A stretch of DNA of 53,451 nucleotides, taken from assembly GCF_001194135.2 (NCBI RefSeq), contig NC_068994.1:40393511-40446961 (forward strand), written 5' to 3'. The stretch's first letter is position 1, and the number at the start of each line of letters is the position of its first letter. This document shows positions 381 through 51,980 of this stretch, in pieces. Source of the DNA: Octopus bimaculoides. Taxonomy: Eukaryota. A program made the translations under genes and the position numbers. Under the pieces are notes generated by a model. The model was not told where the DNA came from. It searched no databases and saw only the letters and a program-made list of their open reading frames with translations.

Positions 381-1527
381 ACACATTGTAAAGCGTTTGA
401 AGTTAAATAACAGAAAATTTGTGTTCAACAGCAAGAAAAGAGAAATATTTTCGGAATATACTGATAGGGATACATGAATGAAAGAAAAAATGAAAGGTTG
501 GCTGGAAGAATGAGTGTAAGAAAGACTAATTGAAAGAAAGAAACTCACAAACTAAAGAAAAGACAGAAAAAAGAAGCAAAGAATGAACAAGTGAGTAAAG
601 AAATGAGCAAGTGACAGATAGAAAGAATGAAGGTATTAATGAATGAAATAATAAATGAATTCATGAAGAAATGAATGAATGAAAGAAAGAAAGAAGGAAG
701 GAAAGCAAGAAAGAGAAAAAGAAAAAAACAAATGTATCAATGACGGAAAGAAAGAAACAAACAAATAAAAGAGAAGGAAGAAGTGTGAATGAATGACAAT
801 CTAAGAAAGTAATGAAGTTAGAAAAAAAAAATATGGAAAATGGCTCCAAATATTAATATATATATNNNNNNNNNNGATAGATAGATAGATATAGATGTAG
901 ATATAGATGTAGATAGATAGATATATATAGAATAAATGAAAGATAAAAAGGAATAGAAATGAAAGAATGAAATAAATAAGAAATTAGAGTCGGAGGAAAA
1001 AAAACAATAAAAGAATAGAAAGAGAAAGAAAGCAGAAAAGTAAGAAAGGGAAAAAGATGAGAAAAAGATAAGAAAGAATGAATGGAAAATTAGAGAAGAA
1101 AAGGAAAAAAAGAAATTTGTATCAAAATATGGAACCATGGAAAGTATAAGAAAGTCAAAAAATATACATATAGTAAAAGACATATCTATTTTCTCAATAC
1201 CCAAAACATTGTTGCTAACTTACACAAAGTGTAATATTATTTGTTATAATAAGTTATAATCTATTATAATAACCTAAGAGCTTAAGTAATATATAATGCA
1301 AGAAAAAAAAAAGAAAAATGTGCACTAGTCTGACTTTTATTTAGTATTTACTAACACCAGATGAATAAAAACTGTCCACCACATCTAAAATGTTTAAGTT
1401 ATTTTGTTTATTCGTTATCTTTTATGTTTGTGTTTATTCATTTTAATAATATTTATATTAAATGTATTGAAATTACTTAAACCTTAAAATTATTTAAACC
1501 TTAAAATTAAATTTAGTCTTATCATAA

Positions 1528-3212: not shown

Positions 3213-3319
3213 CATGATTATTATTATTGCTTTTCAACTTACATAGTCTAAAATTTGTTCATTTCATAACAGATGTTAAAATAAAGTCCCAGTCAAATAT
3301 TAATATTGTTTTTTTTATT

Positions 3320-3782
3320 TTTTATGTTTTTATCTTTCTCTTGTTACATTCTTAGGACTGCAGCCTTGAAAGGAATAGTTGAACAATTGGCTAAAAAGTA
3401 CCTGGGTTTTTTAGTGTGGTACTTATTCTATCAGTCTCTTTTGCTCTACCATTAGGCTCTAAGGATGCAGACAAGTGTTGCCTAGTGGTGGTGACAAATA
3501 GAAAAAACAAAGATACACATGCACACACACACACACATATACATACCCCCCCCCACACACACACACTCATGTACACATACACACACACACACACAATGCA
3601 CACACATATATTTATAAATCCAACAAACTCCTACACAGATCCCATTCACCAAATTCACTAACAAGGTATTGGGTGGTTGGGGGGTCATAGCAGAAGACAC
3701 TTACTCAAGGTGCTGTGCAGTGAGATTGAACCCAAAACCATGTGTTTGCAAAGCTAGCTTATTAACCACACAACCATGCCTC
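3320..3782 (-). mobile_element. tRNA-derived SINE, family B (internal CA/TG microsatellite)
   Basis: Reverse complement gives head ggcatggttgtgtggttaataagct...ttcaatctcactgcacagcaccttgagtaagtgtcttc and the 3' tail shared with 11011-11400 and 36308-36668. Confidence 0.75.
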
Positions 3783-11010: not shown

Positions 11011-11400
11011 GCTGGCATGGTTGTGTGGTTAAGGAGCTTATTTTGCAGCCATGTGGCTTTTGGCTCAGTCCCACTGCACAGCATCTGGACAACCAATGCC
11101 TTATGAGTTTATGAGTGAATTTGGCAGATGGAAACTATTTGGAAGTCTGCCATATGTGTGTGTGTGTGTGTGTGTGTGTAACAGCATGTGAGTGTTTGTA
11201 CCTTACCACTCAAAAACCAATGTTGGTTTGTTTACATCCCTTTAATTTAGTTGTTCAGCAAAAGAGACAAATACAATGATGACTGGACTTAAAAAATAAG
11301 TACTGGGGTGGGTGATTTGTTTAACTGAAACACTCATAGTAGTACTCCAGCTTGGCCGAAGTCTAATGAGTGAAACAAGCATTGGATAAAAGATAACGAT
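11011..11400 (+). mobile_element. SINE family B
   Basis: ggcatggttgtgtggttaagg...cagtcccactgcacagc head, internal (TG)n, tail aataagtactggggt...gtctaatgagtgaaacaag..ataaaagata. Confidence 0.8.
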
Positions 11401-14310: not shown

Positions 14311-15064
14311 TGCATTTGGAAAAACAAAAATACTTGAGAACTGGGTGCCGCACGAATTGAATGACAACCAAAAATTTATGCAACAAGAACAACCTGTTTC
14401 TCGACTGGATTGTGATGTGCAATAAAAAGTGGATTCTTTACGTCAACTGGCGATGCGATGCTCAGTGGTTGGATGCCGACAAAGCTCCACAGCACTTCCT
14501 GAAGCCAAAGTTGCACCAAAAGGTCATGGTGACTGTTTGGTGGTCTGCAGCAGGTCTCATCCATCACAGCTTTTTGGATCCAGGCGAAACCATTACAGTG
14601 GAGAAGTACTGTTAGCAAATGGATGAAATGCATAAGAAACTCCAACAACAACAGCCAGCATTGATCAATAGAAAAGGACCGATTCTTCTCCATGACAACA
14701 CTTGGCCGCACGTCGCACAACTGACCCTGCAGAAGTTGAACGAATTAGGCTACGAAATTCTGCCTCATCTGCCATACTCACCAGACCTCTCACCTACTGA
14801 CTACCACTTTTTCAAGCATCTCGACAACTTCCTGCCTGAGAAATGCTTCAAAAACCAAGACGATGCCAAACACGCCTTCAATGACTTCATCGCCGCCAGA
14901 ACATAGGATTTTTATGCTACTGGTATAAATAAACTTGTTTCGCATTAGCAAAAGTGTGTTGATTGAGATGGTGTTTATTTCGATTAATAAAGTTTTGTTT
15001 GAGTCGGGATATGTGCATCTGAATTTAAAGGTTAAAAACCGCAAGAACTTCCTTGACAACCTAA
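14311..15064 (+). mobile_element. 5'-truncated mariner (D,D34D; cecropia/Hsmar1-like) element
   Basis: WVPHEL at 14342, HDN...YSPDLSPTD with 34 residues between the aspartates, right TIR aaaaaccgcaagaacttccttgacaacctaa followed by TA. Confidence 0.93.
14342..14987 (+). pseudogene. Mariner transposase pseudogene
   Basis: Deletion after WVPHELNDNQK, first catalytic D read as N (MCNKKW), in-frame stops at 14612-14614 and near the C-terminus; ends ..VYFD*. Confidence 0.9.
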
Positions 15065-18707: not shown

Positions 18708-18871
18708 GATGGGCTTTTTTCTGCTTCTATTCTACCAAGTCCACTCACAAAGCTTTGGTTAGGTCAGAGCTATAGTAGAAGACACTTGCCCAAGGACCCA
18801 TGCAGTGGAACTGAACACTAAACCATGTACTTAGAAAGCAATTCTCTTAACCTCACAGCCATGCCTGCATC
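18708..18871 (-). mobile_element. SINE family B 5' half
   Basis: ccactcacaaagctttggttaggtcagagctatagtagaagacacttgcccaagg...cacagccatgcctgc. Confidence 0.8.
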
Positions 18872-19700: not shown

Positions 19701-19835
19701 CTAATCCCGTGTTTATAGTACCAGAGCTGTGACCTCCTCAATGTAGAGAAGTAGTAGCTCAACCTGGGGAGACTCCCTGATCTCACGGGTTATATTTTAT
19801 AACTGTAAATATACAAGCATTCTAAAACATTAATA

Positions 19836-20332
19836 GGGGCAGGCATGGCTGTGGGGTAAGAAGCTTGTTTCCCAATCACATGATTTGGGGTTCAGTCCTA
19901 CTGCATGACACCTTGGGAAAGTGTCTTCTACTACAGCCTTGGGTTGACCAAAGCTTTGTAGATTTGGTAGATGGAAACTGAAAGAAGCCAATTGTGTATA
20001 TATATATATATATATATATAAGCAATGTTAATTCTCTAAATGAAGTATTAACAGTAACTGCACGATAAAGTGTAGTATATTGCCACTTAAGTGTGGCTGA
20101 ACCCTAGGGGTGGATGACCAAGGTCATCAGCTGTCGAACGCCGACGAAGGGAAATAACCCTGAAATCCGGATACGTTCGTGCTGCTGGTCGCGGTGAGAG
20201 GGATAACTCCCTTGGCAAACAGGACACAGTCGTGTGTCGATAAGCCAGCTGGAGGAGATGTCCTCCTGGGGCTAAAAGCAACAGTAACNNNNNNNNNNNN
20301 NNNNNNNNNNNNNNNNTGTGTGTGTGTGTGTT

Positions 20333-20365
<33 letters not shown>

Positions 20366-20585
20366 GTGAGTTTGTCCTCCACCACTACTCAACAATCAGT
20401 GCTTGTGAGTTTATGTCCCCTTGACTTAGTGGTTCTGCAAAAGAAACTGATAGAATAATTACTAGACTTAAAAAATAAGTCCTGGGGTCGATTTGTTTAA
20501 CTAACAAACCTTCGCGGCAGAGCTCCAGCATGGCTGCAGTCAAACGACTGAAACAAGTAAAAGATAATAAAAAAAGATAAAAGAT
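19836..20585 (+). mobile_element. SINE family B split by an insertion in its internal microsatellite
   Basis: Head 19836-19995, (TA)n to 20020, foreign segment 20021-20288, 28-N gap, then (TG)n and the normal 3' half at 20317-20585. Confidence 0.85.
20126..20189 (+). ncRNA. Type I hammerhead ribozyme (variant core CCGACGA, AUA cleavage triplet)
   Basis: Stem I CGAACG 20135-40 / CGTTCG 20174-79; core CCGACGA 20141-47; stem II AGGG-AAATAA-CCCT 20148-61; GAAA 20162-65; palindromic stem III ATCCGGAT 20165-72; H17 = A20173; stem I extension ATCAGC 20126-31 / GCTGGT 20184-89. Confidence 0.8.
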
Positions 20586-22142
20586 TTTCAGGACTTAAGC
20601 ATTTTGAATAAAGGATTATTATTTGTCTCACAAGGCTGGATTATTTCAAAGCAATAAGTTTCCTCATTCGGTGTAGACCTGGGGATTACAACAACAGAAG
20701 TGGAGAAATTTCTTGGCAGTGCCATGTAAATGTCTTCCAGTAACAGTATATAATGACCTCACTGGTTTTAGGAGGTCATCTTATTCAGAATGACATGGAC
20801 ACTTTCTGACAAGAGATATCTAAGAACTTCTAAGAGACATTATCAAGACATGTGAATGAAAAAGTCTAGTTTCAATGATAGAACAATGTTAACAAAAAAA
20901 AAAAGAAAGAAAGAAAAATACATCACAAACTTGTTTGTAAAAAAATGTGAATTTTCAGAAGAAAATTTAGAACTAAATGTTTTTAAACATATATTTAATT
21001 AAACACAGTCTGGTTAAATTATTGTTGACAAAAATATCTGAACAGAGCTTTAGTGTAACATTGTATATAATTCTTCATTTAATTGTCATTTTTAATTTAG
21101 TTGGAATATTTTGTCACGTAGAGATGATTTTCTATCTGAATTTGTATTGTTCATTTAAAAGTGAAAACAAATCTGTAATCTAGTTGGGAAAAATAATCTT
21201 TGCACAGAAATTTTTGGCTGTTCATATCCAACATGGTAATAAAAGACAAAAAAAAAGAGCAACAAACAACCCCCCCCCGCTCCACAAAAGAACAAAAAAA
21301 AGACCAAAACAAAAAAACAAAAGAAAGACAAAATAGAAAGAAAAAGTAGACAGCAGAAAAATATGAAATAACTGAACCTAAATGAACTTAGAATTTCCTT
21401 CTTCACGAAAATGATCGACTTTTTCCAAAATAAATGAATAAATAAATGAATAGATAAATATAAACAAATGAATGAAGACAACATCTAATAAATTAAAAGA
21501 TTAAAAATGCCAATATGGTTGATGAAGTTTTGATAGAAAGCTTATTTAAAACAGTAAATCTGTTTAAAATAATATATTGCCTAATGATCTGAATGCGGCT
21601 TGCTCGTCACTGGAATAAAAAAGGGATATATCATATTTTGCTCAGTTGACATGAAAGGATTAAAATTGTAGTTAGAACAGAATTTATTCAAGGACTAATC
21701 TTTGTATGATTTTATTACTGCATATTTGGAGAAGGAACGGTGTATTGGGTGAGATAGTGGAGGGGATTCAAATAATAAATTCTATTCAAATATCTTGTTA
21801 GATTAATATTCCAAAAAAATCTAAAGACCATTATCATAATGTGCTTTATATGTTTTATATACATATATATATATGTGTGTATTTATTTATTTATTCATTT
21901 ATTTATTTATTCATTTATTTATTTATCTATCTGTTTGTTTCCCTGCAAATTCCAATATAATTATCAAAGCTTTGTAAACTTTGTAGTTTACCTCCCAACA
22001 AGACAATGTATGGTAATTTAAGAGAATTGTGCATAAGAAAGCATCATAGCCCGAGATAAAGAATGTTCCAAGGATATGGAAAAAGTAATGAACATTATAG
22101 TAGGTAGCTTTGTTTGAAAGAGAAACCGGGAAGATGTAAGCC

Positions 22143-26690: not shown

Positions 26691-28207
26691 CAGCCTTGGC
26701 CAAGAGTATTAGGCCGCCCCCAAGATTCTTGGGTTCTGTTATCTCAATGTTAATGAAACTCGTGCACATGGTAGATTATGGTATATTTCACAATATGCAT
26801 TAGTTTCAATATCTGGTTGACACTCCTTTAGCATCAGTTAACCGCTTTTATACTGTACATATGCAACCAATTATGGGTTAGACAAACGACCAAAATTAAC
26901 TTATGTTTCCTTGATTATTTCAGAGTTTTATGCTAAAATACATTGTAGATACAGTTAATAAACAGTAAAATGCCTAAAACAAGGGAGTTGAGTGATTATA
27001 AGCAAGGTCAAATCATAGCTCATCATGAAGCTGGAATGTCTCATAGGCAAATTGCTAAGAAGATGAAATGTTCTCGATGTGCGGTGCAAAGGACTCTCAA
27101 GCACTTCAGAGAGACAAAAGATGTGAAGACAATACAAAGAATAGGCAGAAAAAGTTACTACACCTCGTGATGACAGATCCATCATTTGTCAGTCACTCAG
27201 AAACAGAAGAAAAACATTATCGGAGCTCTGTGCAGATTTCAACAAAGCAAGTTCTTCACAAATATCAACCAGAACTGTTAGAAGAAGACTTGTAGAGTAT
27301 GGTCTGAAAGACTGTAAAGCCAGGAAGAAGCCGTGGGTTTCTGAAGCGAATATGGAGAAATGTCTTCAGTGGGCCAAAAATCACTCAAATTGGACCATTG
27401 AGCAATTGTCAAAAGTCATATGGTCTGATGAAAGTAACTATGACGTAAGATAGTACATGTATTCAATCAACATATAAACTTAATGTAACTGATTTGTTCC
27501 CCAAAATATATAAAAAAGTATCCAACATAAAGCTAATATTATTTTTCATGTTTTTACTCAGGTTTTTGGTACATCTGATTCAACTTTCTTGCATCACAGA
27601 GTTGAGGAAGCATTTAAGGCTGAATGTCTGGTACCAACCATAAAACATGGGAGTGGTTCTATCATGATGTGGGCCTGCATGTCTGCTGCAGGATCTGGAG
27701 AAATGTTTTTATGTCAGGGAAGGATAAATTCAGCGACCTATGTTTCTATGTTATCAGATGTTTTAGAGCCATCAATTGCTAAATTGCACCCAGGAGTGTC
27801 AAAAAACAGTGTTATCTTTCAACAGGACACCACTCCATGTCATCAATGGTTTGAGACACAAAGTATTGTTCCCATGGACTGACCAGTTCAAAGTCCCGAT
27901 CTAAATCCAATAAAACACCTATGGGGAACTCTTGGTGAAGTTATCAGGAACACAATAATTAAAAATAAAGAGCATTTGTACCAAAAGTTGAGAGAAGAAT
28001 GGAGTAAAATTGCACCTAGCACCTGCAAGAAACTAGTTGATTCAATGCCTAAAAGTGGTAATTGATGCTAAAGGAGGGTCAGCTAGATATTAGAACTAAT
28101 GCATATTGTGAAATATACCGTAATCTACCATGTGCACGAATTTCATTAACTTTGAGATAACAGAACCCCAAAACATTGGGGTGGCCTAATACTTTTTGCC
28201 AAGGCTG
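26691..28207 (+). mobile_element. Full-length Tc1-like transposon with ~157-bp TIRs and TA TSD
   Basis: TA|CAGCCTTGGCCAAGAGTATTAGGCC... and ...GGCCTAATACTTTTTGCCAAGGCTG|TA; TIRs about 26691-26849 and 28051-28207; transposase inside. Confidence 0.95.
26970..28093 (+). pseudogene. Tc1 DDE transposase pseudogene with one 117-bp GT-AG intron (27445-27561)
   Basis: MPKTRELS..GQIIA HTH, GRK, WSDES, KHGSGSIMMWACM, FQQD, P.QSPDLNPI(K)HLW, SMP..VIDAKGG..Y*. Frameshift near 27153, stop at 27880-82, catalytic E read as K, only 28 residues between D and E positions. Confidence 0.92.
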
Positions 28208-28407: not shown

Positions 28408-28580
28408 CTATGTGTTTGTGTGTCTTTCTGTCTGTATTTGTCCCCACCACCCACCACTTGACTACTAGACTAGGCTTAAAAAATAACTATTGGGATTGAT
28501 TCATTAGACTAAAAATTGAAGGTAGTTCCATACAATGGCTGCAGTCTAATGACTGAAAGAAATAAAAGATAAAATGAAAG
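28345..28580 (+). mobile_element. SINE family B 3' half
   Basis: (TG)n then tttgtccccaccacc..cttgac...gctgcagtctaatgactgaaag..taaaagat. Confidence 0.7.
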
Positions 28581-29839
28581 ATTCTGTAGTTCTATGGAAG
28601 TCTTAAAAAAAAGATGACATGGTCTTGCATCATATGTTTACGCAGTGAAGGTTGGCTTGGAGCTAAACAACAACAACAACAACAACAGGTAGGTTGTGGA
28701 AGGGTAGAATGTTTATGATTGGGTTATAGGCCTTTAAACTGTGAAGTTACTTCAAATCTCACTAAGGTCAAATTTGCTTTTTATCCTTTTGGGGTTCAAT
28801 GAAATCAAGTAATTACTAAAGCAATGTAAGGCAAAATAAAACTTTATAATGAAAAAATATGATTTATTGTCTATATATATATTCACATTATTTTGTACAG
28901 TAAAATGTGTTTATTATTGACTGCAAATAGTCAAAAGGAAAAAAAAATTATATTTTATGGCAACAACACAATATTTAGAAGAAAAAAAATCAAACAAACA
29001 GAACAAAACAAACAAGCAATGATTTAAAAATAAAATCAATATTTGTAAAAACACTGACAGGAAATGTTGGTGAATTGTGACCATCACAATGAACTGGAAA
29101 TTGGTAATTAAAAAAGGATGGCAAAAAAAAAAAATGATGGCCAAAAATCTTAATAATTTCCTTTGGTTGAAATGGATTAACAACACTAATAAACCTTATT
29201 TCCTTACCTGTTTAAGCAACCAATTAATTATTTATTCTTAAAGATCAGAGTAATTGCTTACAGTGAATTTTTACAATGAATGTTTTAAAATACAAAGGGG
29301 ATGCACATTTGCCACATGACCCATAGACATTGGTACAATTCAGAAGCAACGGCAAGATTGAAGTTGAAAATCCTATATTTCTTGCATTGGTCCTTATCTT
29401 ATTGTATTTCAGTGAATGAATAAAATTAAGTGTATCACACACACACACACACTTGCACACACATGCACACACATGCATACACTAACGTGTATACACACAT
29501 TCATACATGCATACATATGTTCATACATACATGTATACATACATACATGCATACATACATACATACATACATACATACATGCATAAATGCATACATACAT
29601 ACATACATACATACATACGTACATACATAGACACTAGTGGTGCTTTAGCATTGATTTTATGTACAATATCTTTGTAGACCCAAAAATAATGAATAGCCAA
29701 ATCAGTTACAAACTGGTGGTGGAATTTCAACACCAGCCAAATCCCTATCACCATGATAAAGTTGATATAAAATCATGATGAACAACACACACACACACTC
29801 ATATGCATATGTATGTGTTTGCATATATATATATATGTA

Positions 29840-29899
<60 letters not shown>

Positions 29900-30713
29900 T
29901 ATGTAAGCATATATATAGATATACATGTATATAAATATATATGTATATATATATGTATGTATATACATGTAAACATATAGCCTGTGTGTGTAGTGAAAAA
30001 TCTTTGATCATGCTTTTTCCAGCATTTGCTCTGTATATCACAACTAGCAATACTGCTAAGTACAGTAGTAACCACACTGCTATACTGGAAGTAGACTGGA
30101 TGGTGATACTCTATGTGAAGCTCTAAATTCACTGGTGACATTCATATTTCTGTGTATAAGAATATCTATTTGCACACATACATACATGCATACATATATA
30201 TATATATATANNNNNNNNNNTTTTTAAACTTTTAAATTTTCCTATTCAAAAGAGACAGAGACTTCAAATTAATATATATATATTAATGTGGTTCTGTTAG
30301 AGGCATGTATGTGAAACTGTATGCACATGCATTAACAAATGCAAGAAAATATATGTTAAAAGAAGTTAATCACATCAATAGTCTCACACAAAATACCATG
30401 ACTTACTTTTATGATTTGAATATTAGCTCAGCTTGAGAGTCTATCCTAAGAATCTGCTATCTTGGCTGCATGCTCTGTAGTTATCCATCAACTTGAGTGT
30501 CTAGTCTAAGGATCCATCATCTTTAGTGCATACTCAGAGTTTCCATGTGTCTGTCATTGATCAGTAGGTGACAGAGTAATGTTAGAAGACATTCTTAGCA
30601 TTTGCTAATGGTACCCACCTTCTCAGCAATCTCCAAACTACATGACTGTCTCATAATACCTATACATATATGCATATATATCTATCTACACATACATACA
30701 TACATACACACGC

Positions 30714-30800: not shown

Positions 30801-31720
30801 NNNNNNNNNNNNNNNNNNNNNNNNNNNNNNNNNNNNNNNNNNNNNNNNNNNNNNNNNNNNNNNNNNNNNNNNNNNNNNNNNNNNNNNNNNNNNNNNNNNN
30901 NNNNNNNNNNNNNNNNNNNNNNNNNNNNNNNNNNNNNNNNNNNNNNNNNNNNNNNNNNNNNNNNNNNNNNNNNNNNNNNNNNNNNNNNNNNNNNNNNNNN
31001 NNNNNNNNNNNNNNNNNNNNNNNNNNNNNNNNNNNNNNNNNNNNNNNNNNNNNNNNNNNNNNNNNNNNNNNNNNNNNNNNNNNNNNNNNNNNNNNNNNNN
31101 NNNNNNNNNNNNNNNNNNNNNNNNNNNNNNNNNNNNNNNNNNNNNNNNNNNNNNNNNNNNNNNNNNNNNNNNNNNNNNNNNNNNNNNNNNNNNNNNNNNN
31201 NNNNNNNNNNNNNNNNNNNNNNNNNNNNNNNNNNNNNNNNNNNNNNNNNNNNNNNNNNNNNNNNNNNNNNNNNNNNNNNNNNNNNNNNNNNNNNNNNNNN
31301 NNNNNNNNNNNNNNNNNNNNNNNNNNNNNNNNNNNNNNNNNNNNNNNNNNNNNNNNNNNNNNNNNNNNNNNNNNNNNNNNNNNNNNNNNNNNNNNNNNNN
31401 NNNNNNNNNNNNNNNNNNNNNNNNNNNNNNNNNNNNNNNNNNNNNNNNNNNNNNNNNNNNNNNNNNNNNNNNNNNNNNNNNNNNNNNNNNNNNNNNNNNN
31501 NNNNNNNNNNNNNNNNNNNNNNNNNNNNNNNNNNNNNNNNNNNNNNNNNNNNNNNNNNNNNNNNNNNNNNNNNNNNNNNNNNNNNNNNNNNNNNNNNNNN
31601 NNNNNNNNNNNNNNNNNNNNNNNNNNNNNNNNNNNNNNNNNNNNNNNNNNNNNNNNNNNNNNNNNNNNNNNNNNNNNNNNNNNNNNNNNNNNNNNNNNNN
31701 NNNNNNNNNNNNNNNNNNNN
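30801..31720. other. Assembly gap (920 N)
   Basis: N run flanked by (TA)n on both sides. Confidence 1.
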
Positions 31721-32709: not shown

Positions 32710-32972
32710 TGCAGAAAGTTGATTTACTGTACATATAAATATTGTCACATTATTCCAATTTGTTGACCACCAAGAAATTCTATAGAGTTTGAAATATTTC
32801 AGGGTTTGGTAATCTGGATTATTTCACAACTTTCACAACAAACATTGAACTGAATATATATTTCCTATACAGTTCTTGTGTACTCGTTATGTGTCTTTGC
32901 ATTTTTACCATTTTCCCCTTCTTGAAAATAGTATTTATAAAAGAGTTATGTCAGCAAAATATCAAAATATCA

Positions 32973-34424: not shown

Positions 34425-34800
34425 TAGTGTTCAGTCCCACTGCATGGCACCTTGAGAAGGTGTATTCTAATATAGCTTTGGGCTGACCAGAGCCTTGTGA
34501 GTGGATTTAGTAGACGGAAACTGAAAGAAGTCTCATCATGTGTTTGTGTGTACGTTGAGGTGTCTGTTTGTCTGTGTCTTTGTGTCCGTATTTGTTCCTC
34601 ACTACTATTTGACAACCAGTGTTGGTGGGTTTACATCCCAGTAACATAGCAGTTTGGCAAAAGAGACTGATAAAATAAGTACGACACCTAAAAAAAAAAA
34701 TATCAGCTGTTGATTCATTTGATTAAAAAATTCTCCGAGGTGGTGCCCCAGCATGACCTCAGTCTATTAACTGAAACAAGTGAAAGATAAAAGATACAAA
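34425..34800 (+). mobile_element. SINE family B (5'-clipped)
   Basis: gttcagtcccactgcatggcaccttg...gtgagtggatttagtagacggaaactgaaagaag...ctgaaacaagtgaaagataaaagat. Confidence 0.8.
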
Positions 34801-34953
34801 ATTCGTCTACTTACAGAGAGACATGTGTATCAACCAAATCTACTCATAATGCTTTGATTGACCTGGAGAAGACACTTGCCCAATGTGCCATTCAATAGGA
34901 TTGAATGCTAAACCATATGATTGGGAAGTAAACTTTTTAACCATACAGCCATA

Positions 34954-36192: not shown

Positions 36193-36307
36193 TAGAAATA
36201 AAAGAATATTTATTTTCTTCCATATTCTGTATTGTTAATTGACCTTCATTACCTTCTCTTTTATATTTAAAATAACTTTCTTCAAATAAAAAAACAATAC
36301 TTTGATA

Positions 36308-36668
36308 GGTGTGGGCATGGCTGTGTGGTAAGAAGTTTGCTTCCCGAAAACAAGGTTTTAGGTTCAGTCCCATTGTATGTATGTATGTTTGTATGCATGC
36401 ATGCATGCGTGCATGTAATGTGTGTGTGTACATGTGTGCATGTGTGTGTGTGTGTGTCTGTGTTTGTCTCCCACTGCTGCTTGACAACTGGTGTTAGTGT
36501 GTTTACACCCCTGTAACTTAGTGGTTTGGCAAAAGAAACAGACAGAATAAGTACAGAGCTTTAAAATAACAAGTACTGTGGTTAATACATTTGACTAAAA
36601 ATTCTTCAAGGTAGTACCCCAGTATAGCCATGGTCTAATGACTGAAACAAGTAAGAAAGATGAAAGAT
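36308..36668 (+). mobile_element. SINE family B
   Basis: ggcatggctgtgtggtaagaagtttgc...ggttcagtcccattg, (TG)n, cttgacaactggtgttagtgtgtttac...gtctaatgactgaaacaagtaag. Confidence 0.85.
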
Positions 36669-42910: not shown

Positions 42911-43786
42911 NNNNNNNNNNNNNNNNNNNNNNNNNNNNNNNNNNNNNNNNNNNNNNNNNNNNNNNNNNNNNNNNNNNNNNNNNNNNNNNNNNNNNNNNNN
43001 NNNNNNNNNNNNNNNNNNNNNNNNNNNNNNNNNNNNNNNNNNNNNNNNNNNNNNNNNNNNNNNNNNNNNNNNNNNNNNNNNNNNNNNNNNNNNNNNNNNN
43101 NNNNNNNNNNNNNNNNNNNNNNNNNNNNNNNNNNNNNNNNNNNNNNNNNNNNNNNNNNNNNNNNNNNNNNNNNNNNNNNNNNNNNNNNNNNNNNNNNNNN
43201 NNNNNNNNNNNNNNNNNNNNNNNNNNNNNNNNNNNNNNNNNNNNNNNNNNNNNNNNNNNNNNNNNNNNNNNNNNNNNNNNNNNNNNNNNNNNNNNNNNNN
43301 NNNNNNNNNNNNNNNNNNNNNNNNNNNNNNNNNNNNNNNNNNNNNNNNNNNNNNNNNNNNNNNNNNNNNNNNNNNNNNNNNNNNNNNNNNNNNNNNNNNN
43401 NNNNNNNNNNNNNNNNNNNNNNNNNNNNNNNNNNNNNNNNNNNNNNNNNNNNNNNNNNNNNNNNNNNNNNNNNNNNNNNNNNNNNNNNNNNNNNNNNNNN
43501 NNNNNNNNNNNNNNNNNNNNNNNNNNNNNNNNNNNNNNNNNNNNNNNNNNNNNNNNNNNNNNNNNNNNNNNNNNNNNNNNNNNNNNNNNNNNNNNNNNNN
43601 NNNNNNNNNNNNNNNNNNNNNNNNNNNNNNNNNNNNNNNNNNNNNNNNNNNNNNNNNNNNNNNNNNNNNNNNNNNNNNNNNNNNNNNNNNNNNNNNNNNN
43701 NNNNNNNNNNNNNNNNNNNNNNNNNNNNNNNNNNNNNNNNNNNNNNNNNNNNNNNNNNNNNNNNNNNNNNNNNNNNNNNNNNNNNN
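42911..43786. other. Assembly gap (876 N)
   Basis: N run flanked by (TA)n on both sides. Confidence 1.
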
Positions 43787-51478: not shown

Positions 51479-51536
<58 letters not shown>

Positions 51537-51599
51537 GGTGGTGCCTCAAGGCTGAAACATATAAAAGAATATATTCAAACTATTGATAAAGGCCACTTG

Positions 51600-51765
51600 A
51601 ATGATGTTGTCCTCTAAGATAGTCCTGTTTAACTCCAGGGAGACATCTCTGGCTGGTCTATTCAGTGCACTTCTTGCCCTTGACATTTATTGCAAGCTGA
51701 GGATAACTCCTGCTATTCCTAGCTCCAAGACCACCAGACCATCCATGTACTTTCGATCTGTATTG
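51600..51765 (-). mobile_element. Decayed LINE reverse transcriptase fragment
   Basis: KYMDGLVVLELGIAGVILSLQ*MSRARSALNRPARDVSLELNRT resembles Y.DD.V........LQ.M...L......GL.LN..KT. Confidence 0.4.
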
Positions 51766-51980
51766 GATCTCCTTGGTGGTGGGTTCTTGTTTCGCTAGGC
51801 ATGGCAGCAGTTTAATCTCACTTGTAATATACAGAAAACACAGGGTCATACAGTCACTAATTTTGTAACTAGGAAACTAGTCTGTTAGAAAATCTCTGTT
51901 CATGATAGAAGCAGTATACAAATCCTATATATATATATATATATATGCATGCATATATATATATGTATATATATATAATA

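What the first reader, a model, noticed from the sequence alone, without database searches (positions are those of the whole stretch)
20126..20189. Type I hammerhead ribozyme with a variant core and a palindromic stem III
Seen: every hammerhead element in the correct order: 6-bp stem I (CGAACG/CGTTCG), core CCGACGA, 4-bp stem II with an AAAUAA loop, GAAA, stem III, and AU-A cleavage site after 20173. Stem I continues past a UGU/UGCU internal loop into a second 6-bp helix that could contact loop II. Stem III is only about 2 bp within one molecule but is a perfect 8-nt palindrome (ATCCGGAT). Established: minimal type I hammerheads of Penelope-like elements and animal retrozymes have palindromic stem III and cleave as dimers, and AUA is a natural cleavage triplet. 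The U4-to-C core change and the A-U first pair of stem II are non-canonical, so standard CUGANGA searches would miss it. Activity is inferred, not shown.
Basis: partly seen in the sequence, partly recalled or inferred. Interest (0 to 1): 0.9.

Follow-up and report, generated by a model that had tools for sequence, protein, structure and literature searches.

The report
Variant-core hammerhead in octopus retroelement
A roughly 270-300 bp mobile element in an octopus genome carries a sequence built like the self-cutting "hammerhead" RNAs of animal retroelements, but with two unusual letters in the normally invariant parts, so it is probably a real but weakened or inactive relative of a well-known ribozyme class.

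Summary
Window 20126-20189 (+) has every type I hammerhead element in order: a 6-bp helix I with a distal 6-bp extension, core CCGACGA, a 4-bp helix II, GAAA, the 8-nt palindrome AUCCGGAU and an AUA cleavage triplet. It is more than chance: it is the only descriptor hit in the window, with 0 hits in 400 shuffles. It is also the top hit of a covariance model built from four experimentally validated retrozyme hammerheads. No Rfam hammerhead model detects it.

The motif lies in a discrete insert, about 20022-20316. The insert sits in the internal (TA)n/(TG)n microsatellite of an octopus SINE, and other copies of that SINE lack it. A second, old, CpG-decayed element of the same family lies at 51536-51925 (-), also within (TA)n. 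It carries a hammerhead-like motif at the equivalent position. Between the two motifs, 7 of the 10 pairs in helices I and II differ on both sides and none is broken. Its core, CCAAGGA, is what CpG decay of CCGAGGA would give, so C at position 4 is probably a family trait.

Published mutagenesis says U4 changes lower activity strongly, and cleavage is untested here. Verdict: a hammerhead-lineage motif of a Penelope-like-element (PLE) or retrozyme-like non-autonomous element, a variant of a known kind, of moderate interest.

The parts
20022..20288 (+). Element 1: visible part of the mobile insert that carries the hammerhead motif. It continues into the 28-N assembly gap at 20289-20316.
   Evidence: It is absent from four other copies of the host SINE aligned across the same microsatellite. 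GC is 0.49-0.55 against 0.31-0.36 in the flanks. CpG o/e is 0.77 against 0.25 for the window. The 20050-20279 RNA folds with z = -4.4.
20126..20131 (+). Distal helix I, 5' strand (AUCAGC). It pairs with 20184-20189.
20132..20134 (+). Internal loop of helix I, 5' side (UGU), opposite UGCU 20180-20183.
   Evidence: The same UGCU follows helix I in both axolotl retrozyme hammerheads.
20135..20140 (+). Helix I, 5' strand (CGAACG).
20141..20147 (+). Core box 1, CCGACGA (C3 C4 G5 A6 C7 G8 A9). Position 4 is C instead of U.
20148..20161 (+). Helix II (AGGG/CCCU, with A10.1-U11.1) and loop AAAUAA.
20162..20165 (+). Core box 2, GAAA (G12 A13 A14 A15.1).
20165..20172 (+). Helix III palindrome AUCCGGAU. 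In a monomer it forms 2 bp plus a CCGG loop. Between two copies it forms an 8-bp helix.
   Evidence: The cofold of two copies gives the double-hammerhead topology at -52.1 kcal/mol, against 2 x -23.6 for monomers.
20173..20174 (+). Predicted scissile bond, between A20173 (H17, triplet AUA) and C20174.
   Evidence: Position follows from hammerhead numbering. Cleavage was not tested.
20174..20179 (+). Helix I, 3' strand (CGUUCG).
20184..20189 (+). Distal helix I, 3' strand (GCUGGU).
19830..19993 (+). 5' half of the host SINE that element 1 interrupts.
   Evidence: blastn hits to other copies in the window; alignment
19997..20020 (.). (TA)n of the SINE's internal microsatellite, immediately 5' of the insert.
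20317..20366 (.). (TG)n(TCTG)n of the same microsatellite, immediately after the gap.
20367..20600 (+). 3' half of the host SINE.
51536..51925 (-). Element 2: an old, diverged relative of element 1, flanked by (TA)n on both sides.
   Evidence: Sequence. Collinear similarity to element 1 has z about 5, with 0/300 shuffles and 0/1329 genomic control segments reaching it. CpG o/e is 0.12.
51731..51782 (-). Hammerhead-like relic in element 2: CCACCA CCAAGGA GAUC CAAUACA GAUC GAAA (12 nt) U C UGGUGG.
   Evidence: It scores 17.3 bits with the retrozyme-hammerhead model, second in the window, with the next hit at 10.6. Rfam Hammerhead_HH9 gives 12.8 bits, far below its gathering score of 52. It sits at the equivalent distance from the 5' and 3' sequence anchors shared with element 1, measured by hand from the sequences and the alignment (50 versus 60 nt upstream, 81 versus 75 nt downstream).

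Best explanation
The site is a genuine hammerhead-class RNA motif of type I, with the canonical metazoan design. It belongs to a short non-autonomous retroelement of the PLE / non-LTR-retrozyme kind in an octopus genome.

The element inserted into the (TA)n/(TG)n microsatellite inside a SINE. When it is transcribed, the motif is expected to fold into the three-way junction. It would then cut its own backbone between A20173 and C20174, leaving a 2',3'-cyclic phosphate and a 5'-OH.

Because helix III is only 2 bp within one molecule, efficient cutting would need two copies pairing through the AUCCGGAU palindrome, forming a double hammerhead.

The core carries C instead of U at position 4, and A-U instead of G-C at 10.1-11.1. 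C4 appears to be inherited in this family rather than a private mutation of this copy. Cleavage is therefore expected to be slow or conditional.

Shown here: the anatomy, the excess over chance, the insert status, and a second family member with compensatory helix changes. Inferred: the retroelement class, the ancestry of C4, the dimer mode, and any activity at all.
For: - **Anatomy:** all elements are present in the right order.
- **Chance:** it is the only descriptor hit in the window, with none in 400 shuffles.
- **Match to validated ribozymes:** it is the top hit (17.4 bits, E about 0.008) of a model built only from four validated retrozyme hammerheads from coral, mussel and axolotl. Those four show the same design, with palindromic helix III sequences ACAGUACUGU, ACGCGCGU, ACACGUGU and ACAUGU. 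One is cut after A, and one lacks G10.1-C11.1.
- **Insert status:** intact copies of the host SINE at 34.4 kb, 36.3 kb, 3.4 kb and 18.7 kb lack the 20022-20316 segment.
- **Second family member:** element 2 at 51536-51925 (-) also lies within (TA)n and is collinearly similar to element 1. It has a hammerhead-like motif at the equivalent place. There, 3 of 6 helix I pairs and 4 of 4 helix II pairs differ on both sides, with none broken.
- **Ancestry of C4:** CpG o/e is 0.77 in element 1 and 0.12 in element 2. Element 2's CCAAGGA is therefore the expected CpG-to-CpA decay product of CCGAGGA, which argues that C4 predates the split of the two elements.
- **Third copy:** a near-identical copy exists in Octopus bimaculoides (UniRef A0A0L8IHK6). 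Its one inferred change in helix I (A20137 to G) keeps pairing as G-U.
- **Dimer fold:** two copies cofold into the double-hammerhead topology, 4.9 kcal/mol below two monomers.
- **Literature:** the canonical metazoan type I design is described in PMC4209133. Non-LTR retrozymes and their monomer copies are described in PMC7229834 and bioRxiv 10.64898/2026.07.22.740005. PLE insertion bias for microsatellites, including (TA)n, is reported in PMC8557442. AUA is a natural cleavage triplet (PMC1636495). A natural U4C variant is viable in a viroid (PMC3088659).
Against: - No Rfam hammerhead model matches the site, even at about 7 bits.
- Two of the most conserved hammerhead features are not met: U4 and G10.1-C11.1.
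- Single mutants of the CUGA turn have low activity in a tertiary-stabilised hammerhead (PMC9901934).
- The minimum-free-energy fold of the monomer pairs C3-C4-G5 with the CGG of the palindrome. It is 9 kcal/mol more stable than the hammerhead fold.
- No tandem partner, PLE reverse transcriptase or endonuclease gene is visible in the window.
- The comparative evidence rests on two sequences, and the second was found by a structure-based search. It is itself clearly dead: A5, and no helix III.
- The family could not be sampled outside the window.
Confidence: 0.58

Rival explanations
1. It is a fossil or non-catalytic hammerhead. The motif descends from a retroelement hammerhead, but the C4 / A10.1-U11.1 version no longer cleaves. 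On this reading the fold survives either because element 1 is young, or because the three-way junction serves another role, such as recognition by the mobilising reverse transcriptase.
For: - U4 mutants have low activity (PMC9901934), and U4C considerably decreases activity in vitro (PMC3088659).
- G10.1-C11.1 is the most conserved pair after 15.1-16.1 (PMC3088659, PMC4209133), and it is replaced here.
- PLE hammerheads themselves cleave poorly in vitro, and their authors do not exclude other functions (PMC4209133).
- Rfam finds nothing at the site.
- The inactive alternative fold is favoured in the monomer, and C4 adds 2.2 kcal/mol to it.
- Monomer retrozyme copies are regarded as non-transposing offspring (bioRxiv 10.64898/2026.07.22.740005).
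Against: - Ten of the eleven conserved core positions are intact, and all helices are perfect, in a CpG-rich young copy.
- The helices covary between two old lineages that both seem to have had C4. This suggests the C4 form was maintained under constraint for a long time.
- A natural U4C hammerhead supports viroid infectivity (PMC3088659).
Confidence: 0.27
2. It is a tandem retrozyme whose further units are hidden by the assembly gap. On this reading, 20050-20279 is a 230-nt unit, a second unit starts at 20280, and two hammerheads excise a 230-nt RNA that is then circularised.
For: - AACAGTAAC occurs at 20050-20058 and again at 20280-20288, the last 9 bases before the gap, giving a spacing of 230.
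- The 230-nt RNA is unusually structured, with z = -4.4.
- Tandem arrays often break assemblies, and metazoan retrozymes are 170-400 nt tandem units (PMC7229834).
Against: - Only 9 nt repeat, and the same 1-kb scan shows other chance 9-nt pairs.
- The gap is only 28 N, followed directly by the SINE's own microsatellite.
- The O. bimaculoides copy continues AT after AACAGTAAC, not TG as a second unit would.
- Element 2 has no significant internal direct repeat.
Confidence: 0.1
3. It is a chance look-alike: a hairpin-rich repeat that happens to resemble a hammerhead.
For: - The motif is short, and one core mismatch is needed to see it.
- Hammerhead-like sequences are expected by chance in gigabase genomes (PMC3088659).
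- Extrapolating the shuffle rate (of the order of 0.003 per 53 kb) to a genome of a few gigabases, a size assumed rather than measured here, predicts on the order of 100 or more such look-alikes by chance, so the descriptor hit alone cannot decide this.
- Rfam is silent at the site.
Against: - There were 0 hits in 400 shuffles of this window.
- It is the top hit of a model that never saw it.
- Features beyond the descriptor are also present: the distal helix, a perfect 8-nt palindrome, and a 6-nt A-rich loop II.
- An independent, diverged family member has the same junction at the same position with 7 compensatory pairs. The chance of an unrelated hit of at least 17 bits landing in that roughly 60-nt slot is about 0.008 x 60/107,000.
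- The host is a mobile insert in a microsatellite, the known habitat of such motifs (PMC8557442).
Confidence: 0.07

Closest known systems
Canonical type I hammerheads of metazoan non-LTR retrozymes (coral Amil224, mussel Mg353, axolotl Ax353/Ax330; Cervera and de la Pena 2020, PMC7229834)
   Same: - Type I topology, with a 6-bp helix I continued by an internal loop and a distal helix.
- A 4-bp helix II with an A-rich loop of 5-7 nt.
- GAAA followed by a 6-10 nt perfect palindrome as helix III.
- The host is a non-coding element a few hundred bp long.
- The Ax353 construct is also marked as cut after A, and it lacks G10.1-C11.1.
- UGCU follows helix I, as in both axolotl motifs.
   Different: - The core has C4 instead of U4, and 10.1-11.1 is A-U.
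- No tandem array is visible: both elements here look like solitary monomers.
- Element 1 has GC 0.49-0.55, at or above the <45-50% quoted for retrozymes.
- No expression or circular-RNA data exist for it.
Minimal hammerheads in the pseudo-LTRs of Penelope-like elements (Cervera and de la Pena 2014, PMC4209133; Craig et al. 2021, PMC8557442)
   Same: - A retroelement-borne type I hammerhead with a tiny palindromic helix III, thought to act as a dimer.
- Mostly found as dispersed single motifs.
- PLEs insert preferentially in microsatellites, including (TA)n, as both elements here do.
- In vitro activity is low.
   Different: - PLE min-hammerheads have a long helix II (6-8 bp), a short helix I (4-5 bp), an extra nucleotide between A9 and 10.1, and a conserved G10.1-C11.1. 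This motif has none of these features.
- No reverse transcriptase / GIY-YIG reading frame is nearby.
Natural U4C hammerhead variant of a viroid (Ambros and Flores 1998, as cited in Perreault et al. 2011, PMC3088659)
   Same: The same core substitution, U4 to C, occurs in a natural hammerhead that still functions in vivo.
   Different: That is a sequence variant within a viroid population, with a type III hammerhead. Here C4 seems fixed in a genomic retroelement family and is combined with A10.1-U11.1.

Membership tests
Hammerhead ribozyme (Rfam clan CL00010), type I | Three helices around a junction, in the order helix I 5' strand, box 1, helix II hairpin, box 2, helix III hairpin, cleavage site, helix I 3' strand | tested here: met
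   Helix I has 6 bp, helix II has 4 bp, and helix III has 2 bp in cis or 8 bp in trans.
Hammerhead ribozyme (Rfam clan CL00010), type I | Core box 1 is CUGANGA | tested here: not met
   The box is CCGACGA, with C at position 4. C3, G5, A6, G8 and A9 are present.
Hammerhead ribozyme (Rfam clan CL00010), type I | Core box 2 is GAAA, with an A15.1-U16.1 pair and a non-G nucleotide at position 17 | tested here: met
   GAAA at 20162-20165, U20172 and A20173, giving the triplet AUA. AUA is a natural triplet (PMC1636495).
Hammerhead ribozyme (Rfam clan CL00010), type I | G10.1-C11.1 closing pair of helix II (highly conserved, not absolute) | tested here: not met
   The pair is A20148-U20161. Exceptions are known: U-U in some natural ribozymes (PMC3088659) and in axolotl Ax353.
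Hammerhead ribozyme (Rfam clan CL00010), type I | Scores at or above the gathering threshold of an Rfam hammerhead model | tested here: not met
   There is no hit at gathering score, nor at E<=10 on 701 nt or 80 nt. Element 2 reaches only 12.8 bits with HH9, whose gathering score is 52.
Hammerhead ribozyme (Rfam clan CL00010), type I | Helices supported by compensatory changes among relatives | tested here: inconclusive
   Seven of the 10 pairs in helices I and II change on both sides between elements 1 and 2, and none is broken. This rests on only two sequences, aligned by a structure-aware model.
Hammerhead ribozyme (Rfam clan CL00010), type I | Site-specific, Mg-dependent self-cleavage | not testable with these tools
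   This needs in vitro transcription. The literature predicts reduced activity for U4C (PMC3088659, PMC9901934).
Metazoan non-LTR retrozyme | Canonical type I hammerhead with a 6-bp helix I, a 4-bp helix II and a short palindromic helix III | tested here: met
   definition in PMC4209133.
Metazoan non-LTR retrozyme | Head-to-tail tandem units of about 150-450 bp, each with a hammerhead | tested here: not met
   There is no second copy in the window. Only a 9-nt repeat precedes the gap. Element 2 has no internal repeat. Monomer derivatives are, however, common in retrozyme families (bioRxiv 10.64898/2026.07.22.740005).
Metazoan non-LTR retrozyme | [quoted passage not shown] | not testable with these tools
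   No transcriptome data are at hand.
Penelope-like element pseudo-LTR hammerhead | Lies in direct repeats flanking an RT / GIY-YIG reading frame | tested here: not met
   No such frame appears among the open frames of the window. The only transposase remnants are mariner and Tc1/Tc3.
Penelope-like element pseudo-LTR hammerhead | Min-hammerhead design: helix II of 6-8 bp, helix I of 4-5 bp, an extra nucleotide after A9 | tested here: not met
   Helix II has 4 bp, helix I has 6 bp, and there is no extra nucleotide.
Penelope-like element pseudo-LTR hammerhead | Insertion preference for microsatellites | tested here: met
   Element 1 lies inside the (TA)n/(TG)n of a SINE. Element 2 lies between two (TA)n runs. 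The preference is reported in PMC8557442.

The most novel reading that the evidence does not exclude
Cephalopod genomes may harbour a hammerhead lineage that has kept C at core position 4, with A-U at 10.1-11.1, through long evolution and still self-cleaves.

C4 might act as a switch. In the monomer it helps the core pair with the helix III palindrome (CCG with CGG), which would hold the RNA inactive. Cutting would then be released only when two copies dimerise through the palindrome.
Probability: 0.18. Interest if true: 0.6.

Novelty: new variant of a known kind. Interest (0 to 1): 0.38.

Why it matters
Hammerheads in animal retroelements are found with CUGANGA-based descriptors and Rfam models. 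A family with a different core letter is invisible to both. Genome censuses of ribozyme-bearing retroelements, and of the circular RNAs they make, may therefore be incomplete in cephalopods and elsewhere.

If the C4 form cleaves, it widens the natural sequence space of the best-studied small ribozyme. It would also give a natural test case for how peripheral contacts or dimerisation compensate for a weakened U-turn. If it does not cleave, it is an ordinary decaying repeat.

Tried and rejected
- **Rfam.** I searched at gathering score and at E<=10 on 701 nt and on 80 nt. There was no hammerhead hit for element 1.
- **Other copies in the window.** blastn found no close copy.
- **Other copies through proteins.** The longest minus-strand frame hit one O. 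bimaculoides 'protein'. Its DNA is not on record. Its codons leave positions 4 and 10.1 undetermined, because both fall on wobble positions. A concatenated six-frame query found nothing.
- **Pattern scans of public collections.** I scanned viral, metagenome and prokaryotic genome contigs with hammerhead-specific and element-specific patterns. The results were none or only chance 19-23-nt matches. No eukaryotic genome collection was available.
- **Tandem-unit reading.** This was rejected as unsupported.
- **A third hammerhead-like site, 32764-32812 (+), next to a (TA)n run.** It scores E = 0.14 with the two-sequence model and has helix mismatches. Its flanks are not similar to either element. 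I treat it as chance.
- **Strict-scoring local alignment of elements 1 and 2.** It was not significant. Only permissive, collinear scoring was significant, so their homology is probable, not certain.
- **tRNA-like origin.** No tRNA was found in the window.
- **PLE reading frames near the site.** None were found.

Full report
**1. What the window is**

The sequence is eukaryotic. GC is about 0.33, microsatellites are abundant, there are five runs of N, and there are no long reading frames. A minus-strand frame across the finding matches a 54-aa 'uncharacterized protein' of Octopus bimaculoides (UniRef A0A0L8IHK6). Identity is 96% and 85% in two frames separated by a frameshift. The window is therefore from O. 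bimaculoides or a close relative, and the repeat has at least one more, near-identical genomic copy.

**2. The observation**

- The distal helix is AUCAGC/GCUGGU (20126-31 / 20184-89), with one G-U pair.
- The internal loop is UGU/UGCU.
- Helix I is CGAACG/CGUUCG (20135-40 / 20174-79).
- The core is CCGACGA (20141-47).
- Helix II is AGGG/CCCU, with loop AAAUAA (20148-61).
- GAAA is at 20162-65.
- The palindrome AUCCGGAU is at 20165-72.
- A20173 is the nucleotide before the predicted cut.

**3. Is it more than chance?**

- A hammerhead descriptor (up to one core mismatch, a perfect 6-bp helix I, a 4-bp helix II, GAAA, at least 2 bp in helix III, non-G at 17) finds only this site on both strands. 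It finds nothing in 400 dinucleotide-preserving shuffles.
- Looser settings give 0.035 hits per shuffled window with one helix I mismatch, so the strict expectation is roughly 0.003.
- Rfam does not see the site at gathering score, nor at E<=10 when only 701 nt or 80 nt are searched.
- For a test independent of the site, I took four retrozyme constructs whose self-cleavage sites are marked in the supplement of PMC7229834: coral Amil224, mussel Mg353, and axolotl Ax353 and Ax330. I aligned their hammerheads, built a covariance model and searched the window with filters off.
- The finding is the best hit, at 17.4 bits and E about 0.008. A second site, 51731-51782 (-), follows at 17.3 bits. The next hit scores 10.6 bits.

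**4. Comparison with validated ribozymes**

The four published motifs share the design seen here.
- Helix I has 6 bp and helix II has 4 bp.
- Loop II is A-rich.
- Helix III is a perfect palindrome right after GAAA: ACAGUACUGU, ACGCGCGU, ACACGUGU and ACAUGU.
- Ax353 is cut after A and has U-U at 10.1-11.1.
- Both axolotl motifs have UGCU directly 3' of helix I, as here.

PMC4209133 describes exactly this as the canonical metazoan type I hammerhead. It explains that the unstable helix III makes such motifs work as dimers. Two copies of 20126-20189 cofold into that double-hammerhead topology at -52.1 kcal/mol, against -47.2 for two monomers.

**5. Surroundings**

- The motif sits in a GC-rich, CpG-rich segment: GC 0.49-0.55 and CpG o/e 0.77, against 0.25 for the window.
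- The segment lies between the two halves of an abundant octopus SINE, at 19830-19993 and 20367-20600.
- Other copies of that SINE in the window run straight from the 5' half through a (TA)n/(TG)n microsatellite into the 3' half. These are at 34429-34790, 36302-36661, 3313-3781 on the minus strand, and a partial copy (5' half and microsatellite only) at 18709-18868 on the minus strand.
- The segment 20022-20316 is therefore a discrete insertion into that microsatellite. Its last part is hidden by 28 N.
- The 20050-20279 RNA is unusually structured on the plus strand, with z = -4.4 and 0 of 200 shuffles folding as well. The minus strand is less so, at z = -3.2.
- There is no PLE reverse transcriptase or endonuclease frame in the window. 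The only transposase remnants are mariner and Tc1/Tc3.

**6. A second family member**

- The 17.3-bit site lies in a 390-nt element at 51536-51925 (-), bounded by (TA)n on both sides.
- With permissive scoring, this element aligns collinearly with element 1 over almost the whole length of element 1. The z-score is 4.8-5.7 and 0 of 300 shuffles reach the observed score. The reverse-complement control scores like the null. None of 1329 random genomic segments reaches the score with element 1 as query, and 4 of 1326 do with element 2 as query.
- A strict local alignment was not significant, so homology is probable rather than proven.
- Measured by hand from the shared anchors GUAUAUU and GAGAUGUC in the sequences and alignments, the two hammerhead-like motifs are at equivalent positions: 60 against 50 nt downstream of the first anchor, and 75 against 81 nt upstream of the second.
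- Their helices are completely different in sequence yet fully paired. Helix I is CGAACG/CGUUCG against CCACCA/UGGUGG. Helix II is AGGG/CCCU against GAUC/GAUC.
- That amounts to seven pairs changed on both sides and none broken.
- Element 2 is otherwise dead. Its core is CCAAGGA, with A5, and its helix III region does not pair.

**7. Is C4 a private mutation?**

- Element 2 has lost nearly all CpG (o/e 0.12), whereas element 1 has not (0.77).
- In CCGA, C4 and G5 form a CpG. Deamination on the other strand turns CCGA into CCAA, which is exactly what element 2 shows.
- Deamination on this strand would turn CCGA into the canonical CUGA. Mutation pressure therefore runs away from C4, not towards it.
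- The simplest history is that both lineages had C4. This is an inference from two sequences.
- The O. bimaculoides copy cannot decide the matter. Positions 4 and 10.1 fall on codon wobble positions of the only information available, which is protein.
- That copy's inferred changes are as follows. A20137 to G keeps a G-U pair in helix I. G20188 to A turns a G-U into U-A. U20186 to A breaks one distal pair.

**8. Likely activity**

- Ten of the eleven conserved core positions are intact.
- U4 substitutions give low activity in comprehensive mutagenesis of a tertiary-stabilised hammerhead (PMC9901934).
- U4C 'considerably decreases activity in vitro', yet it supports viroid infectivity (PMC3088659, citing Ambros and Flores 1998, which I could not read).
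- G10.1-C11.1 is the most conserved pair after 15.1-16.1 (PMC3088659, PMC4209133), and here it is A-U.
- The monomer's minimum-free-energy fold pairs C3-C4-G5 with the CGG of the palindrome. It is 9 kcal/mol below the hammerhead fold, and C4 contributes 2.2 kcal/mol of that relative to U4.
- I therefore expect slow or conditional cleavage at best, and I cannot exclude none.

**9. What kind of element**

- **Features that fit a non-autonomous derivative of PLEs or non-LTR retrozymes:** short length, no coding capacity, a canonical type I hammerhead, insertion in (TA)n, and 5' truncation of element 1 relative to element 2. PLE bias for microsatellites is reported in PMC8557442. Monomer retrozyme copies dispersed in genomes are described in bioRxiv 10.64898/2026.07.22.740005.
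- **Features that do not fit:** no tandem array, no flanking PLE gene, and helix sizes unlike PLE min-hammerheads.
- **The tandem reading rests on a 9-nt repeat before the gap and is contradicted by three points.** The gap is small. The O. bimaculoides copy continues differently after the repeat. Element 2 has no internal repeat.

**10. Verdict**

This is a variant of a well-known kind, of moderate interest. The one non-trivial point is that the non-canonical C4 looks inherited rather than accidental. A genome-wide census of the family, which I could not run, would settle that.

Noticed in passing
window 19830-19993 + 20367-20600; 34429-34790; 36302-36661; 3313-3781 (-); 18709-18868 (-); 11205-11400; 28469-28582; 34867-34952 (-): There are many copies and fragments of one octopus SINE. 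It has a 5' part and a 3' part joined by an internal (TA)n/(TG)n microsatellite. The microsatellite length varies between copies, and in one copy it was the target of the hammerhead element.
   Followed up: partly
window 14361-14903 (+) and 26949-27879 (+): These are transposase remnants. A mariner-type fragment matches Pfam Transposase_1 (E = 5e-19). A Tc1/Tc3-type fragment matches HTH_Tnp_Tc3_2 (E = 3e-17), with HTH domains upstream. Both are interrupted by stop codons.
   Followed up: partly
window 32764-32812 (+): A weak third hammerhead-like site reads UGACCA CCAAGAA AUUC .. GUUU GAAA .. UGGUAA and lies 53 nt after a long (TA)n run. It scores E = 0.14 with the two-sequence model. Its flanks are not similar to elements 1 or 2. 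It is probably chance, but it could be a very old 5'-truncated copy.
   Followed up: partly
window 20141-20143 with 20168-20170: C3-C4-G5 of the core can pair with the CGG of the helix III palindrome. This pairing is part of the predicted minimum-free-energy fold. C4 makes it 2.2 kcal/mol more stable than U4 would. It is a possible self-inhibited monomer state that dimerisation would release.
   Followed up: partly
window 20180-20183: The tetranucleotide UGCU directly 3' of helix I is identical to that in both axolotl retrozyme hammerheads (supplement of PMC7229834). It may be part of the helix I / loop II contact, or it may be coincidence.
   Followed up: no
whole window; 20022-20288; 51536-51925: CpG is strongly depleted in the window (o/e 0.25). 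Element 1 stands out at 0.77, which suggests a recent insertion. Element 2 is at 0.12, which suggests an old one.
   Followed up: yes
window 866-875, 20289-20316, 30211-30220, 30801-31720, 42911-43786: These are assembly gaps (runs of N), all next to microsatellites. The gap at 20289 hides the 3' end of element 1.
   Followed up: no
window 51728-51784 (-): Rfam Hammerhead_HH9 gives a sub-threshold match of 12.8 bits (gathering score 52) to the relic in element 2. No Rfam hammerhead model matches the better-preserved element 1.
   Followed up: yes
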